A DNA stretch of 64,000 nucleotides from positions 378,303-442,302 of the forward strand of contig NIVC01000302.1 in NCBI GenBank assembly GCA_002269645.1. The letters are read 5' to 3'. Position numbers and translations under genes: made by a program. Below are positions 22,201 to 63,562 of the stretch, piece after piece (the stretch's first letter is position 1; the number at the start of each line of letters is the position of its first letter). The notes beneath the pieces are model-generated. The model was not told where the DNA came from. It did no database searches and worked only from the letters and a program-made list of their open reading frames with translations. The DNA is from Macrostomum lignano (Eukaryota).

Positions 22201-23007
22201 GGCCTGAGCTCCGGCCGCAGCCTCTCAGCCGACCTATGCCTGGTTGCCGTTGGCATCGAGGCCAACACTCAGCTAGCTGAATCGGCCGGATTAGAAATCG
22301 ATCCAGGCGACGGCGGCTTCCTAGTGAACGCCGAACTGGAAGCTCGAGCCGATCTGTACGCGGCTGGGGACGCCTGCTCCTACTACGATGTGCTGCTTGG
22401 CAGGCGTCGAGTTGAGCACGTCAACCACGCTGAGGAGAGCGGCGCCGTTGCCGGCCGGAACATGGCGTCCGACCCGGCTGATCCGGACAGGAAACGGTCC
22501 ACCTACCAGCACCAGAGCTCGTTCTGGTGCAACCTGGCCAACACACTGGCCTGGGACGCTGTGGGATTAGTTGACTCCCGCCTAGAGACTCAATCATTCT
22601 TTGCTATGCCTCCGCTAGCATCCGATGACGGAGCAGCCGGCAGCGACACCGCGGAGGACTATCAGTATCCGGGAGTGGTTTTCTACCTGAAAGCCGGTCG
22701 GGTTGTTGGCATCCTGCTGTGGAATTTGCCAGACGAAATCTTTCAAGATAAGAAAGCGTTCGCTCCGTCGAGGCTCAATCTGGCCAGGAAGGTGCTGGCG
22801 GAGAGGCAGCTGGCGGACCCAGCGGCGCTGCAGGCTCTGGCTAGAGAGTTCGACGTCTACCAGACTGTCGACGACGACTATCAGGATTTAAAGAAGTACA
22901 TGGAGACCAAGGAGAGACAGCAGCAGCAGCAGGCGGAGGCATCGGCGACTGCCAATTCGTCGGGTCCTGCCGCAACCGGTGTCGCATCAGCGCCAGTGCC
23001 CGCCTGA
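19207..23007 (+). CDS. AIFM1: Apoptosis-inducing factor, mitochondrial (AIFM1-like flavoprotein); exons 19207-19905, 20934-21455, 22039-23007 (~729 aa)
   Basis: Arg/Ser-rich presequence and Ala-rich TM segment; VPYLIIGSG, PYLRPPLSKELW, KCLLATGG, VIGGGFLGCELA, AAGDA, RRRVEH, HQSSFW, AVGLVDS and GILLWN; GT-AG introns join in frame. Confidence 0.93.
20027..20868. repeat. 28-bp minisatellite (ccccatcccgagaccttccctcagaatt)n in AIF intron 1
   Basis: Direct tandem array. Confidence 0.97.
21495..21945. repeat. ~32-35-bp minisatellite (cccccccgcttaattgatctggccgctgcaaa)n in AIF intron 2
   Basis: Direct tandem array with a variable C-run. Confidence 0.93.
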
Positions 23008-23544
23008 GATTGTTTCGCCTATTAGCATAAAAATATGTCATCTTCTGTGTCCGCTAGTACTAATAGTAGCGTGCTAGTTTGTTTTCTAGTTGGGAACAAA
23101 ATAGAAGCTAGTGGAAATTGGGCTGTTATACGAGAGACTTCGTATTGTAAGAAATAGACTACGCAAACTTCGCCCCTAGTTTTGTTATTCTCTCCCGTTT
23201 TTATAGCTGTCAAATTTATCACATTGCTGTCTCTATGCATTCATTCATTAGCGAAAAATCTAGCGATTTAATAATGCGTTTAAAGCAGAAAAACCTACAC
23301 GCGGCTTTGTGCCTAACGGTCGCAGAATCTACCGTTCAGCTTACCAACTATAGAATTGCTGTCTATTTTCCAGAGTTCCCAGCTCTTGTTTCATACATTG
23401 TTTTTGGTTAATCTGCTATGTCTTCTGCAAAACTAATGATGCGATTAATTGGAACTGCGCCTTCAAGTCGCTTATTTTCGTTCGGGCTTGCTCAGAGACA
23501 CTTTGATTCACCCTTGTGGGATCTCCCTCATCATCTCCATCAGT

Positions 23545-24135
23545 CATGAGAATCTGCCTCTCCGCTCCATCAGTCCCTGAGAATCTGCCTCTCCGCTCCA
23601 TCAGTCCCTGAGAATCGGCCTCTCTGCTCCCCCCCGTCCCTGAGAATCTGCCTCTCCGCTCCATCAGTCCCTGAGAATCGGCCTCTCTGCTCCCCCCCCG
23701 TCCCTGAGAATCTGCCTCTCCGCTCCCTCAGTCCCTGAGAATCTTCCTCTCCGCTCCATCAGTCCCTGAGCATCTGCCTCTCCGCTCCATCAGTCCCTGA
23801 GAATCTGCCTCTCCGCTCCCTCAGTCCCTGAGAATCTTCCTCTCCGCTCCATCAGTCCCTGAGCATCTGCCTCTCCGCTCCATCAGTCCCTGAGCATCTG
23901 CCTCTCCGCTCCATCAGTCCCTGAGAATCTGCCTCTCCGCTCCATCAGTCCCTGAGAATCTGCCTCTCCGCTTTATCAGTCCCTGAGAATCTGCCTCTCC
24001 GCTCCATCAGTCCCTGAGAATCTGCCTCTCCGCTCCATCAGTCCCTGAGCATCTGCCTCTCCGCTCCATCAGTCCCTGAGCATCTGCCTCTCCGCTCCAT
24101 CAGTCCCTGAGCATCTGCCTCTCCGCTCCATCAGT
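23545..24135. repeat. 31-bp minisatellite (cagtccctgagaatctgcctctccgctccat)n in the AIF-CDK spacer
   Basis: Direct tandem array ending ~60 bp before ttttag|ATG. Confidence 0.96.
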
Positions 24136-24197
24136 GCTTGAAACTGTTTTTCACGCCCATGCTGTGTGCTTATATTTCTTAATCCACAATATTTTAG

Positions 24198-25117
24198 ATG
24201 CAGGAAGATAAAAAGCTAAAGAAAAAGAAGAAGGAAAAGAAAAAGAAGGAAAAGAAAGAAAAAAAGGAGAAAAAGCAGAAGAAAGACAAGAAAGAGAAGA
24301 AAGCCAAACGGCTTCAGCGTCGCAGCCCAGAGTTGGTCGGCGGCAGCGACTCCGACAGTTCCGTCCCGGCGCCAAAAGCAAAGCGGCAAGCCCCGGCATC
24401 TTCTGCGACTCCGGCCATCGCAGCCGCCTCTGCCGATCGCAGCCAGCATCGGCACCGAACGACATCCAGCCGGCATCTGAACGCCCCCGCGACTGCTCGC
24501 GACCGGTCCAGATCGCGGGACCGCGGCAGGCGCGACCGAGTCGAAGGCGGCAGCTCCAGCGGCAGCCGCGATCAGCAGCGGCCCAGCATCAGCGTCGGGC
24601 TCTGGTCGGAGATCTCCCGCAACACCGGCTGCGCTCTGCCACCGCCTCCGGAAGTGCCGAAGCAGCAAAAGCAGCAGCAGCAGCAGCAGCAATCATCATC
24701 TTCTTCGTCAGCTGGCAGCGGCAGTTCAAAGCGGCCTGCAGCTTCTGTATCCAACGATCAACAGCCGCCAGCTAGTAAGTTGGCGCGTCATCACCATGGC
24801 AACCAGGCTGGCAAAGAGCAACACCACTCGGAGGTCCGGCTAGAAGACATCAGCCTGCCAGCTGGCAAACCCGCCGCCGTAGCCTCTTCGGCCGCCGGCT
24901 CGGCTGTTGCCAAGGAGACGACGCAGCGTCGGTTATCGACAATGCCGAATTTGCCTATGCCGCCGGGCATGGAGCTGGCGACTGCGGGCAGCTCGGGCAG
25001 CAAGTCGAGACGGTCGCAGCAGCAGCGGCTATCAACCCTGCCTGACCTGCCTCTCCCAAGTGTGAAACTCGATCATCATCGACGAAGCCAAAGATCTTCC
25101 ACTTCCAGTTCTTCTGT

Positions 25118-32441: not shown

Positions 32442-32873
32442 GGATCCCGTAAATTTTCTATAGCGGTTCTAGTAATATACTCTTACACCCTGATTGTTTT
32501 GCACTGGGTGACAAATGTGCGTGCAATGAATCCTCTATGGTAGCTTTGCTCTCCCAGGATTCAGAACTCAATGTCCATGTCTAACTCTATAGTTTTAGTC
32601 TTAAAGTATACTCGTAGGTCATTTTGCGCCTCAATAATACTCGAAGCTCTTCATGACTCAACCCTCGTGGTCGAGCAGACTCAGCGAAAATACTACTTAT
32701 CGCAAGCCAACTCAAAATAGGCCAACCTGGGGATTGAAATTAAAAAAAACAGGAATTGTCTATGGCCAATAGAAAGCTAACAAATAACTTCAGTCTACTC
32801 GGGGGACCTTCGAAATCCATGCAGCATTGACAGTCGGTTTAAATACGGACTTAAACAGTTTTCCTGCCAGCCC

Positions 32874-33158
32874 ATGTCTTCCATACCTTGGCCACCCGAA
32901 GCAGCGGCCCTGGTTGCGGCTACTAGGAGGGCCTATCAGCGGTGGACTGCGCACCTGATGCACAGCAATGCCTTCTCCTTGTCGCGGTCCGAACTGGAAG
33001 ACGAGTCGCTGGACCCAAATAGCAATAATACTAATAGTAATTATTATTATTGCCATTATTATTTGCAGCCAAGAGAGCGTAAGGCGTTGAAACGGCCATT
33101 GAGCGATTCCGATTTGGAGTTGGCGGCAGTTGGCGGCAAGCGAGCCGCTCGAGAATGA
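32874..33158 (+). CDS. Small hypothetical protein, 94 aa
   Basis: GC-rich ORF; ttttcctgccag acceptor-like site 3 nt before the ATG; KRP..KR basic motif; no family recognised. Confidence 0.45.
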   Translation: MSSIPWPPEAAALVAATRRAYQRWTAHLMHSNAFSLSRSELEDESLDPNSNNTNSNYYYCHYYLQPRERKALKRPLSDSDLELAAVGGKRAARE

Positions 33159-35281: not shown

Positions 35282-36054
35282 CTTCACACATCAACATGGT
35301 ATAATAAAGCCACTTTATAATGTTGCAACTTTAATCAGCTTGAGTAGTAAAATCATTAATTAGTAATAATAGCAACTATTACAACACATCAGGAGACAAT
35401 ATTATATTTTGCATAGCAGGCATGATTTGAAATCTTTAATAAACTGTTGAATTAGCAATCAATCAAAGCGTTACATATTTTAGCACAAATATAGCATTAA
35501 TACGATTCCAGAACTATTTCAAGTAGACAATAACAATTAACAGTCGATACTGCGGAATTCTTGATAAATTGATCGCATAAAACAGCAACAGGAAGGGACA
35601 AAAGATAATCAAAGTGAAAGGCATGTGAAAAAATCCACTTCTCATAGCAGAAATCTACAGCGCCCGGTTAGTCTGTATTTACAGCATGCCAGAGTACTTT
35701 TCTATTTCGTGTGTTCGAAAATTTAAACGTTTTTTTAAAAAGTTCGAATGATAAACTTCAAATTTACAGCATTTTTTTACAATAACTGATATTCATTAGC
35801 GCCATATTCAGGTTATTCTACTCTATTGGCTTAGCACAAGTAGTATTTTTTATAACAGAAACAGAAACTCTGACAGTCTGACAGAAAAAAACAGGAAAAT
35901 TTGGAAGGCGGATCAAAAATATTGATGATGATGAGATTCTGGGTTGGAGCCAAGTTGTCTGGTTAATCAGGATTCTTTATCTTAGTTTGAGCAGCTCGGA
36001 GTCTGCAGTGATTTTTGCTTTTTTAGATTTAAATTCTTAATATACCATAGAGGA

Positions 36055-37210
36055 TATCCTACAGTCTATAGATTATCCCTACACTATAGATGATTCCCTA
36101 CATTCTATAGATGATTCCCTACATTCTATAGATGATTCCCTACACTATAGATGATTCCCTACATTCTATAGATGATCCCTACACTATAGATGATTCCCTA
36201 CATTCTATAGATGATTCCCTACATTCTATAGATGATTCCCTACATTCTATAGATGATTCCCTACACTATAGATGATTCCCTACATTCTATAGATGATTCC
36301 CTACACTATAGATGATCCCTACACTATAGATGATTCCCTACATTCTATAGATGATTCCCTACACTATAGATGATTCCCTACACTATAGATGATCCCTACA
36401 CTATAGATGATTCCCTACATTCTATAGATGATTCCCTACACTATAGATGATTCCCTACATTCTATAAATGATTCCCTACATTCTATAGATGATTCCCTAC
36501 ACTATAGATGATTCCCTACATTCTATAGATGATCCCTACACTATAGATGATTCCCTACATTCTATAGATGATTCCCTACACTATAGATGATTCCCTACAT
36601 TCTATAGATGATTCCCTACACTATAGATGATTCCCTACATTCTATAGATGATCCCTACACTATAGATGATTCCCTACATTCTATAGATGATTCCCTACAC
36701 TATAGATGATTCCCTAAATTCTATAGATGATTCCCTACATTCTATAGATGATTCCCTACACTATAGATGATTCCCTACATTCTATAGATGATTCCCTACA
36801 CTATAGATTATTCCCTACACTATAGATGATCCCTACACTATAGATGATTCCCTACATTCTATAGATGATTCCCTACACTATAGATTATTCCCTACACTAT
36901 AGATTATTCCCTACATTCTATAGATGATTCCCTACATTCTATAGATGATTCCCTACATTCTATAGATGATTCCCTACACTATAGATTATTCCCTACACTA
37001 TAGATGATTCCCTACACTATAGATGATTCCCTACATTCTATAGATTATTCCCTACACTCTTTAGATGATTCTCTTCATTCTACAGATGATTCTCTACACT
37101 CTAAAGACGTTTCCCTACATTCTATAGATTCCCTACATTTTATAGACAATTCCCTACACTCTATAGATGACTCCCTACTCTATAGATTATTCCCTACATT
37201 CTATAGACAA
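36055..37210. repeat. 19-21-bp minisatellite (tatagatgattccctacattc)n
   Basis: Direct tandem array. Confidence 0.97.
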
Positions 37211-37873: not shown

Positions 37874-38785
37874 TCAGGCCATCTCGCCAGTCCGTCTCAG
37901 CAGAGTCACCTGGTCCTGAATCTGGCCAGCAAGCACCCGGGACAGAAATATAGCTGTCAGCTGCACTACAGACACTCCGATAGCCACCCCGGCCACTGGC
38001 AGTACATTCTTTTCAACGTATTTCCTAGTGGCAGCCACACAGCCGATAGTCCAGATTCGGTCGTCTGGCTGTTCAGTCTGCGCCATGACATTATAGCCGC
38101 ACATTGTGTTAATCACTCGATCGTCAATGTCGTTCATCTTTTTGCAGCAGGAGAACGGCACCCCGCAGCGCTCCGGGCTGGTGTTATTTGATGTACAGGC
38201 GAAGTACTTGTTCTCGCTCCAATCTTTATATGAGGCCGCACCGCAGCAGGCCAGGTTTTTGTGATAACAATCTATGAAATTCTGCGTGTCCTCATAGCGC
38301 TCCTCTCTGTACATAGTGATCATATTGGTCTTGAGCACTGTCTCCATGTACTCAATAGCCCGTTCTTTCAACGCGAACACGGCTATAGCGGCCGAGCATT
38401 CAATTAGGAATATGACAAACAAGGACAGGGCAAAGAATTTCAACAGGCAGACATTGTCGCGAAGCGAGCCCAGACAACCGGCGAAGGTCAGCAAGAAAAC
38501 GATTGCGCCGAACGCAATAAATACCAGGGTTGCATCGAACAGCACGCTGAACACGTCTTGAACTCCGCCATTGTCGGAGGCGAATGCGTCCTTCTTCATC
38601 GCGGTGGCGATAATGCCGATAGCTAGGATGCCAGTGCCCGCCAGCCAGAATATGAAGTTGAAAAAGAACAGCGCGTACTTTATACAAGGATTGACAAAAT
38701 TTGTGCGACGGCCAGCTGGTCGAAGTCCCGCTGCGGAGGAGGACGCGGCTGCGCCAGCGCTGCGACGATTCGACTTGCCAGCCAT
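37874..38785 (-). CDS. Tetraspanin, TspanC8 subfamily (TSPAN5/14/17/33-like), 303 aa, intronless
   Basis: Four TM segments, CIKYALFFFNFIFW, AGCLGSLRDN, CCG, NKYFAC, ERCGVPFSCC, INTMCGY, IWTIGC. Confidence 0.93.
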   Translation of the reverse strand: MAGKSNRRSAGAAASSSAAGLRPAGRRTNFVNPCIKYALFFFNFIFWLAGTGILAIGIIATAMKKDAFASDNGGVQDVFSVLFDATLVFIAFGAIVFLLTFAGCLGSLRDNVCLLKFFALSLFVIFLIECSAAIAVFALKERAIEYMETVLKTNMITMYREERYEDTQNFIDCYHKNLACCGAASYKDWSENKYFACTSNNTSPERCGVPFSCCKKMNDIDDRVINTMCGYNVMAQTEQPDDRIWTIGCVAATRKYVEKNVLPVAGVAIGVSVVQLTAIFLSRVLAGQIQDQVTLLRRTGEMA

Positions 38786-38861
38786 TGGGTGGTGCCTGTC
38801 GTTGCTGTCAGCTGTTGGCGATGCCGCTGGTCGTGCTATGCAATGGGATATGGGATCAGAG

Positions 38862-40280
38862 TGAGTCTATGACCTGCTGAGTGAGTCTATAACCTGCTGA
38901 GTGAGTCTATGACCTGCTGAGTGAGTCTATGACCTGCTGAGTGAGTCTGTGACCTGCTAAGTGAGTCTGTGACCTGCTGAGTGAGTCTATGACCTGCTGA
39001 GTGAGTCTATGACCTGCTGAGTGAGTCTATGACCTGCTGAGTGAGTCTATGACCTGCTGAGTGAGTCTGTGACCTGCTGACTGAGTCTGTGACCTGCTGA
39101 GTGAGTCTGTGACCTGTTGAGTGAGTCTGTGACCTGCTGAGTGAGTCTGTCACCTGCTGAGTGAGTCTGTGACCTGGTGAGTGAGTCTGTGACCTGCTAA
39201 GTGAGTCTGTGACCTGCTGAGTGAGTCTATAATCTGCTGAGTGAGTCTGTGACCTGCTGAGTGAGTCTGTGACCTGCTGAGTGAGTCTATAACCTGCTGA
39301 GTGAGTCTGTGACCTGCTGACTGAGTCTGTGACCTGCTGAGTGAGTCTGTGACCTGTTGAGTGAGTCTGTGACCTGCTGAGTGAGTCTGTCACCTGCTAA
39401 GTGAGTCTGTGACCTGGTGAGTGAGTCTGTGACCTGCTAAGTGAGTCTGTGACCTGCTGAGAGAGTCTATGACCTGCTGAGTGAGTCTATGACCTGCTGA
39501 GTGAGTCTGTGACCTGCTGAGTGAGTCTGTGACCTGTTGAGTGAGTCTGTGACCTGCTGAGTAAGTCTGTGACCTGCTAAGTGAGTCTGTGACCTGCTGA
39601 GTAAGTCTGTGACCTGCTAAGTGAGTCTGTGACCTGCTGAGTGAGTCTATGACCTGCTGAGTGAGTCTATGACCTGCTGAGTGAGTCTATGACCTGCTGA
39701 GTGAGTCTGTGACCTGCTGAGTGAGTCTATGACCTGCTGAGTGAGTCTATGACCTACTGAGTGAGTCTGTGACCTGCTGAGTGAGTCTGTGACCTGCTGA
39801 GTGAGTCTATGACCTGCTGACTGAGTCTGTGACCTGCTGGGTGAGCCTATGACCTTCTGAGTGAGATTACGAACTGCTGAGTGAGTCTTTAAACTGCTGG
39901 GTGAGCCTATGACCTGCTGAGTGAGTCTGTGACCTGCTAAGTGAGTCTTTAAACTGCTGGTTGAGCCTATGACCTGCTGAGTGAGATTACGAACTGCTGA
40001 GTGAGTCTGTGATCTGCTGAGTCAGTCTGTGACCTGCTGACTGAGTCTATGAACTGCTGAGTGAGTCTATGACCTGCTGAGTGAGTCTGTGACCTGCTGA
40101 GTAAGTCTGTGACCTGGTGAGTGAGTCTGTGACCTGGTGAGTGAGTCTTTAAACTGCTGGGTGAGCCTATGACCTGCTGAGTCAGTCTGTGACCGAATGA
40201 GCTGATGAGTGATTGTGTGAATGATGAGTGAGTCTATGACTTGCAGCGTGAGTCTATGACCTGTTGAGTGAGTCTATGAA
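38862..40280. repeat. 20-bp minisatellite (gtgagtctgtgacctgctga)n in the BRCC3-tetraspanin spacer
   Basis: Direct tandem array, degenerating toward 40.2 kb. Confidence 0.97.
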
Positions 40281-41098: not shown

Positions 41099-41899
41099 CT
41101 AGGCCTGGTCGACGCACCGATCTCGGGCCACTTGAATCAGCGGCCAGATCAGCCTATCAACAATTGAGCCAACGTTGCAAGCATAAGCGCAGGCGGGGGC
41201 CAATTCAACAACGCTATCGCTGCTATTAGACGATGAAGCTGTTGCTTTCTGATTACTTTTGGGTTGCTGCTGCTGCTCAAACTCTCGCTGCTCCTCTTCG
41301 AACAGCAGGCGAGGCAGCGCCACCACGCCTGCGGCATTCTCGGCAGCGGACACGGCGGTGGCGGCGGCGGCATCCGGAGAGGTGGCGCAGTGCGGCGGCC
41401 GGACTCGCATAGGTATGTAGGCGCACGAGCCGCGGACATTTTGAAAGCACAGGGCCTGGCAACGCTGGCCCCGTTCATGACCGCTATAGACGGCGAATAT
41501 TAATCCTACAAATGATTCGGCCAGCTGCTGGTAGCTCAGCTGAGTAGCCAGATCTACATGGCTGGGCAGGGCTGTGATGTGCGGATGGCTGTGGTACCAG
41601 CCAACTACACGGACAGTGCGGCCCAGCTGAGCTGTGAGCTCATCGGCCCGCTGGGTGGCCGCAACCAGCTGGTCTGGCTCAATTTCAACTCGATCTTTGC
41701 GCTTGTCAACTCGCAGCAGCGGCAAAAAGGCCAGGATTTCCAAATTGACGCCGCCAACAGCATCGCCAGCCGCTGATTGCAGCTCTTCGCCAAGGCAAAG
41801 GCCCATGATCTCTTCATTCTCGGTGACCATGGCGTGAGTCAGGCAGCCCCAATAGGCCACCCAGTCAAGGGACACCCGGTCTACCACTGGTAGATGAGA
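41099..41899 (-). CDS. BRCC3: BRCC36 K63-specific JAMM/MPN+ deubiquitinase; single coding exon with no genomic ATG before the conserved N-terminus
   Basis: CLTHAMVTENEEIMGLCLGE, VEIEPDQL, RVVGWYHSHPHITALPSHVDL (HxHx7Sx2D), FVGLIF. The ORF-track start at 41887 is GTG; the start given here is the in-frame acceptor at 41899. Confidence 0.92.
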   Translation of the reverse strand, partial: SHLPVVDRVSLDWVAYWGCLTHAMVTENEEIMGLCLGEELQSAAGDAVGGVNLEILAFLPLLRVDKRKDRVEIEPDQLVAATQRADELTAQLGRTVRVVGWYHSHPHITALPSHVDLATQLSYQQLAESFVGLIFAVYSGHERGQRCQALCFQNVRGSCAYIPMRVRPPHCATSPDAAAATAVSAAENAAGVVALPRLLFEEEQREFEQQQQPKSNQKATASSSNSSDSVVELAPACAYACNVGSIVDRLIWPLIQVARDRCVDQA

Positions 41900-44460
41900 C
41901 TGCAGAGTTTTGAAAGATTTTAGTGAGTGCCAGTTGTCTGAGTGATTTTCAAATTCATAAACATCAGCATAGCCATACTTATATTTACAAAAACATGTTT
42001 ACAAAAAACTTCATGCATAACACCATACACTTAATAAATAACATAAATAACACATACAAGCACAAGTGTCTGTGTAAAACAAACAAAAACCAAAAATGTG
42101 AAACAAATAACATCAATAGATTTTATCTTTACAACTATACTAAATTCTTGTTATTGTTTTTTGTTTCCTATTTTTAACGCTTTTCAGTGTTTAGCAAATA
42201 AAAAAATAATAAGATTATATAGAAAAGTACAAAAAAACTCACAACTCAACAAACATTAATAAATTATTTTGATTACATTGTTAATGTCTGTTTAGACCAC
42301 ATTTAGCACATACTGAGATTTAATTTTTTCAGTTTTAATCAATTTCATTGAATAATTTTTGATTTATAAAGAAGAATGAGTTCTTTAATAATAAAGAACA
42401 TTGAAGACCATGAACTTGACAAAGACAGTGACAATGATTCAAGTCAATTGAGTGGGAGTGATTCAGACTGTCACTCCAGTCACTCCAGTGTAGGCAGGCA
42501 GACACAGTGCTACTGCTACTGCGAGTGATAGCGCTAGTGCTATTGGTACTTTTGCTCCTAAGCCCATACATCTTTGACTAGATATTTGCAACTAATAGAT
42601 TAAAACTACGAGTGTAGGCCTTCCCAAAGAACCCATTTCTGATTTGCCAACTTTGTCTTCCAGGAATTCAAAGTCTAAATCCTATTAATACCCATATCTC
42701 TTCATTGCAAAATTTAAGTAAGCATATTAAGTCAAATATCCAAGTAGTTTCTCAAAGGTAAGCAAGCATTTCTGTTACTTACTTATTATGTAACATAATA
42801 CATTTTCATACATTTATAATTTATATTTATTAAATTATTAATTAAAAGCTAAGATGTGAGAAAATAAAAGGAATTAATTTTAAAGAAGGCTTAGGTGAAA
42901 AATATTAATATTTAATAAACAAGAAGCATTATAACATTATATTAATACTAATTTACTCTATACTTATAGAATCTATATAAGCATCTGTAATAAATGGAAT
43001 CTATATTATATAGATCATATAGAAACACTAAAGGGCTAAAGGCTATATTATTTAATTAGTACATTAAAGTTTTCATTTTTAGGAATATAATTTTAACATA
43101 AAATTTCATACAAGAAATCTAAACATATACCAATGCAATCCAATGCCATAATCTAGTGAAAATAATGATAATTGATTTAAATGTACCAACAAATAAGGTC
43201 ATTATTTAGTTTATTTTAAATTGTTTTCATATAACCTACAATTTGATGGATATTAAACAAAATCTCAAAAACTTACTTAGTATCTTAACATAAGTGAGTA
43301 AAGTGACTAAAATTGAAACATGATTGCAATTTCTTTTGATAATATAAATATACTTACTAATACCAATGCTAATTTTCAGTTTGAATTTCAAAGCAAGGCC
43401 AAGCCTAAACATAATAATGATAGTTCCAAATCAACCAACTGCAATACTAATCTGCTATCCAAGACCAAGACTGATTCTAAAACTGGTATAGCAGCTTCAG
43501 CTTTAGCTAGTGCTAGTGTTGAATTGCCCTTGCCTACAGCTATAGCCATGACCACTATATCAACCTCAACTATTGTTATTCAATCTATTCAGCTATTGTT
43601 CCTACAACTCCTGCAGGATCTATTTAAACTTTGAGGCCTGGATAGTCTCTTAGTCAACCTAGTGGTCCCAGTTATACTCTTACTCAGGCTGAGGCTACTC
43701 CTAGATGTTTATCTGTGCATGTATTATCTAGCCCCTTATGGAAGCACCAGCACCAATCAATTCTACCACAAACAGTGGCCACTATAGTGCAATGTTCTGG
43801 CATACTGTGTTCTGGAAGAGGTGGTAAAGCAAATTATAAATGTTGTGGTTAAAAACATACTATAATTCCAGGTAATTGAATCTACATCTATTTGTCCACC
43901 TTTTCAAGACACTAAACTCAAATAAAGTGGTGCCATCCTGCTAGACATTAGGCCAAAGAATTTTGAAATATTATCAAGGTGGAATGCAGCCTCAGCATCT
44001 ACCTACAACTAGCAATGCTTGATGTTCACATATAAGCACCATTTTTAATTGCTATTAACAATTGACATTAGCCAGTTGCATATGTACCAATAGGAGAGGA
44101 GAAGTGACCACCTCTGCTTTGTATTTGTGGTCTTAATTTGACAATTCATGAGGTACCAATTGAGTAAACTTGTGTACCTTGGCTAGTTGATGCAAGTGAG
44201 GGCAATCATTTGATAGTCTACCCAAAGGACTTGCACTAACTTGCATGTGGTTTGTTAGGGGTCAGCCTCAATTAGTATATGCAAGTGGTCATTATCCACC
44301 TTAGAAGGATATCCTGTGTGGTAGCATGGGTCTGCTCAGTTGCTCCACTCAGTGTAATGTACAATGCAGGTGTATACCTGCACGCGCATGTGTGATTGGC
44401 TTACACTTTGTCAGACAACCTTTATTGTTGGCCAGCTATATTAAATACTAGCTCTCTGCC

Positions 44461-61410: not shown

Positions 61411-63562
61411 AGCTCAAGACCCCAAAACCCACCCCACGAGGTGGCCTTCAGACCCCAGGGAAGATGACAGGTGCAGTCATAAATCATGCGCAGAACATAA
61501 TAAAAGCAACTTGTCTAGACACCCTGGCGCCAAAAGTGACAGCAAAACACCCATAAATTAAAGGAGAAAGTAATAGAGCGAGTGGGGAAAGCTGGAAAGA
61601 CCTCTTTGACCCAGACAGGCTGGAGCCAAAAGTGACAGCTAGACCGCCATAAATCACCGAAAACAGTGAAAAAGCCGCAAATCTGGGGTCAGAATGGGGT
61701 TGAAACCATTCCTCCCAGACTTAGTGTCGCCCGTCTAGACTGCTAGAGGTCAATCCGTCTCAGACCCAGACAGTCTGACCTTCAAAGATGCGTAAACAAT
61801 CCAAAATTAGAATCCTAAGAGAAGTACATTGAGTATTAATCATAACTAATAGTGGTGGCATAAATTAGTGTAGAACTTAGCCTGGATGAGAGAATGGAGA
61901 GAGATTCCTAAGCTAGCCTACTGACAGTAGGGGAAAAGCGCATAGAAGCAAAACGTGCAGTTCTAAGATTGAAAAAAGGTGCGTCCTCATCATAGTAAAA
62001 AAGCGATCAAGCAATGAGAGTTTTTAACACACACAGTTACATGTACTTGTAACTTCCATGCACTTACACTGACTGCAGGACCAATGAAAGACAGTACCCT
62101 GGAGTCCGCGGTACTCATTTAGGCTGACTGACGAACACCCTACTCTGTGCTGCCAGCAGCGTTGACAACCATCGCACTGAAAGCCATGTTGCTTCGGTCA
62201 AACTTCTTTGTGACAAACTATGCATGGATACATATAGCCTTCAGTAAGTGTTTATTTATCAGTTCACGATTCATCAACTCTCTAGTATAGAGTTTGCCCC
62301 TGTTTATAAAGTTAAGCTGCAGTAAAAGCGTTGCAGGAGTGCTCAATATTCAGTGTAAGCACATGCATATACATATATCTCTGCTCTCATTCATGCAATA
62401 TATACACATGTACATCATCGTGAGATATCACAAAACAATTATTTGACTGCCAACGATTTAGGTTATAAGAATACTTTAGAGTTTAGGTTATGGGTTAGAA
62501 AGTAAGGTTTAGGATAGGTTCGGATTAGTTTCGTAGTCGATTCACGGCAGTCGAATAGCTGGTCCCCTATCTAGTCAAACTGCGGCTTGTCTTTTTGTCG
62601 TATGATAGGCCTATGTAATAATCTCTCCATTTTTCAAAGTTGGCTTGCCCGCTTGGAAAACTCACAAATATTGCGGGCATGAAAACAGAACTGCATTTAC
62701 TGTATTTAACCCGTTCATATTATAAGAGCCAGTCGTTCGTTTGCACCACTTGATTTAACACAAAAGAATCTCTAGCTAATTTTTCTTTCTATATGGTGTC
62801 TTAATCATATAACCAAATATCACATAAGCTCAACAATAGCGACTAATTAGCCACTAAATAAGTCAATAATTTAACCAGGATTTGACTTTCTTCACTTTAG
62901 GGCTTCACTGATTTTAATTTTTCATTAGAAGGGCTTTTCAGGCCATTGTGAGATTAGGCTATAGTTCAAAAACTTGTCATTTAACTGTTTCATAAATTTT
63001 CCGTTAATTTTTTAAGAAAATATACTAATGTTGCTCGAGCAAGTATATTTATGAGCTTTCATGCATCTTTTCCCCTTTTGTCTCTTGCACCACCTTCTAT
63101 TTGCATACATCAGCTATACACATATTGAGTTGTATTTATTCAGCATCATAAAAATTATCTAGACTAATCATATCGGCATAATTAAAAGCAAATTTACTTT
63201 AATTCTATAAGTACGAGTAGGAACTACGGATTGCGCTAGCATAGTATTTGCCGATCGCATCTCTCATCATTTTCGCATGAGCTTTATAGTAGTCAAGTGC
63301 TCATGAATATGAAGAGTATTTACTCAACGGATAATCTCACCATTTTTTCAAAGTTAGCATGCCCGTTTGGAAAACCAATGTTTGGTCAAGGACTATACTC
63401 AAGTAGAAGGACGGGAAACCGATCGTTTCTTGGAAAATTTTGGAGGCAGGTTTTTTCCGAAAAAAAACACTACGGAGATTAAGGGGTTTTCCTTTTTTCA
63501 GCACAAACAATTTATTGCTTTCGATAGGAGGCAAACCCAATGTTTATCTTTTGATATGTTGT

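What the first reader, a model, noticed from the sequence alone, without database searches (positions are those of the whole stretch)
41099..42001. BRCC36 has no start codon for its conserved N-terminus; the upstream acceptor is in frame for a spliced-leader AUG
Seen: on the minus strand the frame is open from a TAA at 42001-41999 to residue 20 of the ORF-track protein with no ATG. The first ATG (41830) lies inside the MPN domain (HA-M-VTENEE) and would delete VDRVSL..CLTHA, which matches human VQAVHL..CLNHA. The acceptor-like aaaatctttcaaaactctgcag ends at 41900, and the next base opens TCT CAT CTA CCA GTG GTA GAC, in frame with the domain. Established: flatworm SL exons end in AUG and can supply the initiator Met. 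Inference: the protein would start M-SHLPVVDRVSL, making translation of this DNA-repair DUB dependent on trans-splicing. CDK12 (ttttag|ATG) and the 94-aa ORF (ccag|CCC ATG) also have in-frame acceptors.
Basis: partly seen in the sequence, partly recalled or inferred. Interest (0 to 1): 0.8.

Follow-up and report, generated by a model that had tools for sequence, protein, structure and literature searches.

The report
BRCC36 start codon supplied by trans-splicing
In this flatworm (Macrostomum lignano) the BRCC36 deubiquitinase gene has no start codon of its own for its conserved N-terminus and almost certainly borrows the AUG at the end of the trans-spliced leader RNA, a mechanism already known in flatworms, so the case is real but ordinary.

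Summary
The window is Macrostomum lignano (Mlig_3_7, NIVC01000302.1). On the minus strand the BRCC36 frame is open from TAA 42001-41999. The first in-frame ATG is at 41830, inside the MPN domain. The acceptor CTGCAG ends at 41900 and sits in phase 0.

- The M. lignano spliced leader ends in ATG.
- CTGCAG fits the published trans-acceptor motif [T/C]TNCAG.
- The deposited gene model is 5'-partial and starts exactly at 41899 (SHLPVVD...). The annotation pipeline sets 5' ends from SL-bearing RNA.
- The 23 residues before the first genomic ATG include four columns invariant in my ten-sequence alignment and fold as strand 1 plus helix 1.
- No consensus cis donor with an in-frame ATG exon lies within 3.1 kb upstream.

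The mechanism is already known: Cheng et al. 2006 reported more than 40 Schistosoma cDNAs that need the SL AUG. This is therefore a new member of a known kind.

One thing was unexpected. The two other genomic copies read CTG and ATG where the window has CAG. A copy of the neighbouring tetraspanin reads TTG instead of TAG. Every change is towards the SL's 3' bases. The assembly was polished with RNA-seq, so these are most likely polishing artefacts. A real swap between an acceptor and a start codon is less likely.

The parts
41900..41921 (-). 3' end of the outron: aaaatctttcaaaactctgcag. The last six bases CTGCAG (41905-41900) are the trans-splice acceptor.
   Evidence: One search gives the sequence. 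CTGCAG fits the [T/C]TNCAG motif enriched at M. lignano SL acceptors (PMC8629364). The annotated CDS begins at the next base.
41099..41899 (-). Single-exon BRCC36 coding sequence as deposited: 266 codons without a start codon, plus TAG at 41101-41099.
   Evidence: Searches show the annotated 5'-partial protein P0001. Pfam JAB and BRCC36_C match. PDB BRCC36 chains match at 1e-38. The JAMM residues (E, HSHPH, S, D) are conserved.
41831..41899 (-). The 23 codons SHLPVVDRVSLDWVAYWGCLTHA. They are conserved N-terminal coding sequence with no genomic start codon.
   Evidence: V9, C19, H22 and A23 are invariant among orthologues. The AlphaFold model gives strand 6-12 and helix 13-25 at block pLDDT 82-89. 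PDB alignments begin at query residue 6-7.
41828..41830 (-). First genomic ATG, in frame, in context GCCATGG. It is a possible second initiation site giving a 243-aa protein that lacks strand 1 and helix 1.
   Evidence: One search shows it is the first ATG in any frame of the exon. A 243-aa form exists as a UniParc entry, P0123.
41999..42001 (-). In-frame TAA that closes the frame upstream. No in-frame ATG lies between it and the acceptor.
41887..41888 (-). Alternative AG (ctaccAG|TGG TAG). An SL joined here would give AUG UGG UAG.
   Evidence: This AG is conserved in all three copies. It does not fit [T/C]TNCAG and is not the annotated 5' end.
41885..41887 (-). GTG used by the mechanical ORF list as a 'start'. 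It is the internal Val6 codon of the deposited 266-aa protein.

Best explanation
The gene is transcribed with an upstream outron. The 35-nt spliced leader, which ends ...UUGCAUG, is trans-spliced to the acceptor CTGCAG|. The first exon base is therefore 41899.

The SL's terminal AUG then sits directly in frame before UCU CAU CUA. It serves as the initiator, giving MSHLPVVDRVSL..., a full-length 267-aa BRCC36 with an intact MPN fold.

The SL AUG has a weak context (U at -3, U at +4). The next AUG is in frame and strongly contexted (GCCAUGG, 41830). Some leaky scanning to a 243-aa N-truncated form is therefore possible.

What is shown:
- the sequence anatomy and the phase;
- homology of the N-terminus that has no ATG;
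- the fact that the deposited model begins at this base.

What comes from the literature:
- the SL sequence and the acceptor motif;
- the use of SL AUGs as initiators in flatworms;
- how the annotation defined 5' ends.

What is inferred:
- that this particular copy is trans-spliced at this site;
- that ribosomes start on the SL AUG.
For: Organism and SL.
- The window is M. lignano Mlig_3_7.
- Its SL ends in ATG, and the trans-acceptor motif [T/C]TNCAG matches CTGCAG here.
- A Logan transcript contig from a related Macrostomum (L005, 83% nt identity to M. lignano in the tetraspanin CDS) begins TTATTGCATG|. This shows the SL 3' end on an mRNA directly.

Annotation.
- The deposited proteins of all three copies start SHLPVVD without Met.
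- The pipeline cuts 5' ends at SL-read peaks or SL-trimmed transcripts and then runs TransDecoder.

Frame.
- SL-ATG plus the exon gives MSHLPVVDRVSL... with no stop.
- No genomic ATG in any frame precedes 41830 in the exon.

Need for the N-terminus.
- Four invariant columns lie upstream of the first ATG.
- The region is modelled as strand 1 plus helix 1 at pLDDT 82-89.
- Orthologues and solved structures have only 4-12 residues before the aligned strand. An SL-AUG start therefore gives a normal N-terminal length.

No cis alternative.
- There are 0 GT[AG]AG donors preceded by an in-frame ATG-bearing open exon within 3.1 kb upstream.
- No upstream gene is annotated within 10 kb.

Copies under constraint.
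- Differences between copies are 5 synonymous to 1 non-synonymous, and 6 to 2.

Paralogues.
- The paralogue bases at -2 and -3 read as SL bases (CTG, ATG).
- The assembly was polished with RNA-seq.
- This is what SL-bearing reads ending ...ATG|TCTCAC would leave behind.

Precedent.
Against: - No SL-bearing read, EST or cDNA of this gene could be retrieved. The 267-aa M-form and the 243-aa form are not on record in the assembly collection, and no supplementary table lists the gene.
- A '5'-partial' annotation alone is not proof. The neighbouring tetraspanin is also 5'-partial, yet its SL AUG is out of frame and it has its own ATG.
- AUG 41830 has a much better Kozak context than the SL AUG.
- The window copy shares no homology with the other two copies beyond about 190 nt upstream of the acceptor. 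Its promoter, and hence its expression, is not assured.
- In the assembly, two of the three copies lack an AG at this position.
Confidence: 0.8

Rival explanations
1. Translation starts only at the genomic AUG 41830, giving a 243-aa protein. The in-frame stretch between the acceptor and that AUG is 5' UTR.
For: It is the first genomic ATG, in an optimal context GCCATGG. A 243-aa form was once predicted and sits in UniParc as P0123. The SL AUG context is weak.
Against: - The 23 upstream codons keep residues that are invariant across the animal orthologues aligned: V9, C19, H22, A23.
- They form strand 1 and helix 1 of the MPN fold.
- Such conservation is not expected of a UTR.
- A truncated protein would lack core secondary structure.
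Confidence: 0.07
2. A cis-spliced upstream exon, missed by the annotation, supplies the ATG and uses the same acceptor at 41900.
For: Parasitic flatworms share acceptors extensively between cis- and trans-splicing (PMC12582326). One weak candidate exists in the window: ATG AAG TTT TTT|GTAAAC, with the ATG at 42014 and a 103-nt intron (read).
Against: - No GT[AG]AG donor with an in-frame ATG exon lies within 3.1 kb.
- The weak candidate is absent from both paralogues.
- The RNA-seq-based annotation has no upstream exon and leaves the CDS 5'-partial.
Confidence: 0.04
3. Non-AUG initiation (GUG 41887, or a CUG) on the transcript, without any need for the SL AUG.
For: GTG 41887 is in frame. Paralogue L002 reads CTG exactly where the AUG would be.
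Against: - GTG 41887 has a poor context (ccaGTGg, pyrimidine at -3).
- An in-frame AUG delivered by the SL would be met first by scanning ribosomes.
- The CTG in L002 is probably an assembly artefact.
Confidence: 0.03
4. The window copy is a silent or decaying duplicate. The acceptor and frame are inherited features, and only the other copies are expressed.
For: Homology to the other two copies stops about 190 nt upstream of the acceptor, and the upstream 10 kb has no annotated gene. The DV1 line carries redundant duplicated chromosomes.
Against: - The ORF is intact.
- Differences from the other copies are mostly synonymous, 5:1 and 6:2.
- The window copy is the only one with a canonical AG in the assembly.
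- This rival concerns expression of one copy, not the mechanism.
Confidence: 0.06

Closest known systems
Flatworm SL 3'-terminal AUG used as initiator methionine (Cheng, Cohen, Ndegwa and Davis 2006, J Biol Chem 281:733; called 'slORFs' in PMC9851317)
   Same: The SL ends in AUG. The acceptor sits in phase 0 before a conserved N-terminus that has no genomic ATG. The protein would be made as M plus the exon-encoded sequence.
   Different: The species (the free-living M. lignano rather than Schistosoma) and the gene (BRCC36) differ. No cDNA or translation data were obtained here. A strong in-frame AUG 23 codons downstream could give a second product.
SL trans-splicing in Macrostomum lignano as annotated in Mlig_3_7 (Wudarski et al. 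2017; Ustyantsev and Berezikov 2021)
   Same: The same 35-nt SL and the same [T/C]TNCAG acceptor motif apply. The gene model's 5' end lies at the acceptor, and 30-39% of genes are trans-spliced.
   Different: In the passages I searched, those papers do not discuss use of the SL AUG as a start codon, and they do not mention this gene. Wiberg et al. [quoted passage not shown]
BRCC36 / BRCC3 JAMM deubiquitinase (PDB 5cw3, 5cw6, 6gvw, 6r8f, 6h3c)
   Same: The MPN+ domain has E, HSHPH, S and D. A BRCC36_C helical region is present. Identity to animal orthologues is 36-42%.
   Different: - The gene has a single exon here.
- The protein ends about 20-33 alignment columns earlier than the orthologues aligned.
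- It carries two lineage-specific insertions (AAGDAVGG, and an Ala-rich stretch).

Membership tests
SL-AUG-dependent ORF (flatworm slORF, Cheng et al. 2006) | The organism's spliced leader ends in AUG immediately before the donor. | tested here: met
   The published M. lignano SL is ...TTATTGCATG followed by GTAAG. Logan transcript contig L005, from a related Macrostomum, starts TTATTGCATG|. No SL RNA gene lies in the window itself.
SL-AUG-dependent ORF (flatworm slORF, Cheng et al. 2006) | SL-bearing transcripts join at the proposed acceptor. | not testable with these tools
   The evidence is indirect only. The deposited CDS starts at 41899, and the pipeline sets 5' ends from SL evidence. SL-like bases appear at -2 and -3 in the paralogues of an RNA-seq-polished assembly. 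No reads or cDNA were obtained.
SL-AUG-dependent ORF (flatworm slORF, Cheng et al. 2006) | The SL AUG is in frame with the main ORF, with no intervening stop. | tested here: met
   ATG plus the exon from 41899 translates to MSHLPVVDRVSL...DQA.
SL-AUG-dependent ORF (flatworm slORF, Cheng et al. 2006) | The mature mRNA has no other AUG upstream of conserved, required N-terminal sequence. | tested here: met
   The first ATG in any frame of the exon is at codon 24 of the deposited protein. Residues 6-25 are conserved and structured.
SL-AUG-dependent ORF (flatworm slORF, Cheng et al. 2006) | Ribosomes initiate at the SL AUG. | not testable with these tools
   This needs Ribo-seq, N-terminal proteomics or a reporter assay.
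BRCC36 (JAMM/MPN+ K63 deubiquitinase) | An MPN+ domain with the JAMM metal-binding motif, and a BRCC36 C-terminal helical domain. | tested here: met
   Pfam JAB 1e-16 and BRCC36_C 4.2e-5, above the cut-off. The invariant residues E27, E30, H103-S-H-P-H107, S113 and D116 are present. PDB BRCC36 chains match at E 1e-38.

The most novel reading that the evidence does not exclude
The CAG / CTG / ATG series at one position in three near-identical copies is real, not a polishing artefact. Recent paralogues would then have switched between a genome-encoded initiator ATG (L003) and an SL-donated AUG (window) at exactly the same codon, passing through a CTG intermediate (L002). That would be a caught-in-the-act example of how a start codon is outsourced to, or recaptured from, the spliced leader.
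Probability: 0.15. Interest if true: 0.55.

Novelty: new member of a known kind. Interest (0 to 1): 0.28.

Why it matters
For the gene itself, the correct M. lignano BRCC36 protein is MSHLPVVD... (267 aa). It is neither the 'partial' 266-aa record nor the 243-aa truncated form. Expression constructs, knock-ins and homology models should use this N-terminus. Synthesis of the full-length protein depends on trans-splicing.

For annotation, 5'-partial models that begin in phase 0 at an SL site with a conserved N-terminus should be completed with the SL Met.

For the assembly, SL-like bases replace the acceptor AG in some copies (CTG and ATG for CAG; TTG for TAG). This suggests that RNA-seq polishing wrote leader bases into Mlig_3_7 at trans-splice sites. 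That would erase acceptors and create spurious genomic ATGs. If general, it would affect motif statistics at SL acceptors.

Tried and rejected
1. Orthologues from other Macrostomum species, to test conservation of the acceptor phase. The protein search found nothing closer than 54% local identity (38% for the top hit) apart from the M. lignano cluster. The Logan collection holds a related-species tetraspanin transcript (L005) but no BRCC36.

2. Direct transcript evidence. Exact look-ups of the SL-Met 267-aa form and of the 243-aa form found nothing. Gene identifiers were not found in the held supplementary files.

3. The idea that the gene is a retrocopy carrying a degenerate SL upstream. Local alignment of the SL to the 60 nt upstream of the junction scores below the null mean for BRCC36. 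For the tetraspanin it is not significant (null fraction 0.18). Rejected.

4. SL fragments elsewhere in the window. The longest SL suffix found is 9 nt (TATTGCATG at 62400, minus strand). It is followed by a short random ORF and is not a gene start.

5. A fourth syntenic region (L006, NIVC01000768.1) has the CDK12, 323-aa and gene-3 paralogues but no BRCC36 or tetraspanin.

6. The CDK12 junction ttttag|ATG is identical in three copies, so it adds nothing to the artefact question.

7. Rfam found nothing in the window.

Full report
**What is in the sequence.** On the minus strand the mechanical ORF 41099..41887 starts at a GTG. The same frame stays open upstream to a TAA at 42001-41999. The 33 in-frame codons between that TAA and 41900 contain no ATG. 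The tract aaaatctttcaaaactctgcag ends with its G at 41900. The next bases, TCT CAT CTA CCA GTG GTA GAC, are in frame with the ORF. The first ATG in any frame of this exon is at 41830-41828, in the context cacGCCATGG. A second AG at 41888-41887 would put an SL AUG in front of UGG UAG.

**What the gene is.** The translation matches Pfam JAB (1e-16) and BRCC36_C (4.2e-5, above the curated cut-off). It also matches solved BRCC36 chains (5cw6, 5cw3, 6gvw, 6r8f, 6h3c) at E 1e-38 to 4e-35. In an alignment with nine animal orthologues the JAMM residues are invariant. So are four positions upstream of the first genomic ATG (V9, C19, H22, A23), and D14 is nearly invariant. An AlphaFold model built on that alignment (mean pLDDT 78) places strand 6-12 and helix 13-25 in this region, with block pLDDT 82-89. 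Starting at ATG 41830 would remove both elements. Orthologues and crystal constructs carry only 4-12 residues before the aligned strand. A Met placed directly before SHLPVVDRVSL therefore gives a normal N-terminal length.

**Where the window comes from.** The exact protein is in the public collection as a 266-aa sequence that starts SHLPVVDRVSL, without Met. It lies on contig NIVC01000302.1 of GCA_002269645.1, the Macrostomum lignano Mlig_3_7 assembly. Two further copies exist: PAA85834.1 (BOX15_Mlig014230g1), 380 kb away on the same contig, and PAA50256.1 (BOX15_Mlig008788g1) on NIVC01003684.1. Both are named 'partial'. The deposited CDS is thus a single exon, 41899..41099, beginning at the base after CAG.

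**What is known about this organism.**
- The M. lignano SL is CGGTCTCTTACTGCGAAGACTCAATTTATTGCATG, followed by a GTAAG donor in the SL RNA gene.
- 30-39% of genes are trans-spliced.
- The top motif at trans-acceptors is [T/C]TNCAG (PMC8629364; PMC5730564). CTGCAG at 41905-41900 fits it; TACCAG at the alternative AG does not.
- The Mlig_3_7 annotation sets 5' ends from SL-trimmed reads (the TBONE pipeline) and SL-trimmed de novo transcripts. It then predicts ORFs with TransDecoder. A 5'-partial ORF in phase 0 at the first base after an AG is the expected output for an SL site whose leader supplies the start codon.
- Wiberg et al. [quoted passage not shown]
- For the phylum, all reported SLs end in ATG. 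Cheng et al. 2006 found the SL AUG in frame in 28% of trans-spliced Schistosoma mansoni transcripts, and required by more than 40 cDNAs (as cited in PMC9851317). I could not read Cheng et al. itself.
It is L005 from SRR28338165, a tetraspanin orthologue 83% identical in nucleotides to M. lignano, so from another Macrostomum species. It shows the leader's 3' end on an mRNA directly.

**Rivals.**
- *Cis-spliced upstream ATG exon.* There are no GT[AG]AG donors preceded by an open, ATG-bearing in-frame exon within 3.1 kb. No upstream exon or gene is annotated within 10 kb. The one weak candidate I could construct by eye (ATG AAG TTT TTT|GTAAAC at 42014-42002) is absent from both paralogues.
- *Initiation only at 41830.* This is contradicted by the conservation and predicted structure of the upstream 23 residues. 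Its excellent context, against the weak context of the SL AUG, does make some dual initiation plausible.
- *Non-AUG initiation at GTG 41887.* The context is poor, and scanning ribosomes would meet the SL AUG first.
- *The window copy is silent.* It loses homology with the other copies about 190 nt upstream of the acceptor. Its ORF is intact, however, and the differences between copies are mostly synonymous: 5:1 and 6:2.

**A caution.** A '5'-partial' label alone proves nothing. The tetraspanin gene 2.3 kb downstream (38833..37874) is also 5'-partial after ...cattgcatag|ca. Its SL AUG is out of frame, giving a 52-codon overlapping uORF, and it has its own ATG 16 codons in.

**The unexpected observation.** I aligned the three copies. 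The triplet before TCT is CAG in the window, CTG in L002 and ATG in L003, and all three models start at TCT. L002 and L003 differ at only 2 of 197 positions in this upstream stretch, and one of those two is this C/A. At the tetraspanin acceptor, L001 and L002 read TAG while L003 reads TTG. All three changes replace genomic bases with the SL's bases at -2 (T) and -3 (A), working outward from the junction.

The methods of Wudarski et al. state that the Canu assembly was polished with Pilon using Illumina DNA reads and RNA-seq mapped by STAR. The simplest reading is that SL-bearing RNA reads overhanging the junction overwrote the acceptor in some copies. On that reading the ATG in L003 is a footprint of ...AUG|UCUCAC mRNAs, which indirectly supports trans-splicing at exactly this site.

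The alternative is that the variants are real. Paralogues would then have exchanged an SL acceptor for a genomic start codon via CTG. This cannot be excluded here, but it does not explain the tetraspanin TTG. I give it about 0.15. The CDK12 junction (ttttag|ATG) is unchanged in three copies, so any artefact is not universal.

**Verdict.** The mechanism is long established in flatworms and already presumed for Macrostomum. This is a new example, not a new kind. Its practical value is a corrected protein N-terminus and a warning about RNA-seq polishing at SL sites. Interest 0.28.

Noticed in passing
L002:9998-10000 and L003:9998-10000 versus window 41902-41900; also L003:12536-12538 versus window 38838-38836: In other assembly copies the acceptor AG is replaced by SL-like bases: CAG becomes CTG or ATG for BRCC36, and TAG becomes TTG for the tetraspanin. 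Mlig_3_7 was Pilon-polished with RNA-seq, so leader-bearing reads probably overwrote the genome at trans-splice sites.
   Followed up: partly
window 37874-38833 (minus strand): This tetraspanin gene is also annotated 5'-partial after cattgcatag|ca. Here the SL AUG is out of frame, giving a 52-codon uORF that overlaps the gene's own ATG at 38785. Seven bases just upstream of the AG (ATTGCAT) equal the SL's 3' end; the SL alignment over the 60 nt upstream is not significant.
   Followed up: partly
window 38859-40279 and 36047-37207: Two long tandem arrays are present: a 20-nt unit x 71 copies and a 21-nt unit x 58 copies. The first abuts the tetraspanin acceptor and produces the spurious repetitive ORF 39007-39393 (TDSLSRSQTHS...).
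   Followed up: no
window 41900-42090 versus L002 and L003: Homology between the window copy and the other two BRCC36 copies ends about 190 nt upstream of the acceptor. Downstream, the window copy and L002 are 99.35% identical over 6.9 kb. In the first ~25 codons and the proximal upstream region L002 matches L003 instead. The copies are mosaic, through gene conversion, recombination or assembly mixing. A copy in inverted orientation lies 380 kb away on the same contig.
   Followed up: partly
window 41099-41300 (C-terminus of BRCC36): The M. lignano protein ends about 20-33 alignment columns before the orthologues aligned, so it lacks the end of the C-terminal helix. It has lineage-specific insertions (AAGDAVGG after the first hairpin; an Ala-rich stretch DAAAATAVSAAENAAG; a QQQQPKSNQKATASSSNSS linker). 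The gene has no introns.
   Followed up: no
window 23007-24198 (plus strand): The AIF homologue ends at 23007. CDK12 starts at 24198 directly after ttttag, on the same strand 1.2 kb downstream. This may be a polycistronic pair resolved by trans-splicing, in which case the SL AUG would add one Met in frame (MM...).
   Followed up: no
L005 (Logan SRR28338165_166209) 1-60: This transcript contig from another Macrostomum species carries the SL 3' end TTATTGCATG joined to a tetraspanin 5' UTR. There the SL AUG opens a 7-codon uORF (MPVDQSD*) ahead of the gene's own ATG at position 53.
   Followed up: partly
window 32796-33158 (plus strand) and its paralogues in L002, L003, L006 and L007: This small gene of unknown function is annotated with different 5' ends in different copies: 120 aa and 114 aa as 5'-partial models, and 99 aa and 94 aa with an ATG. 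The sequence around the starts differs between copies (CAGTTTTCC versus TAGATGTCC).
   Followed up: partly
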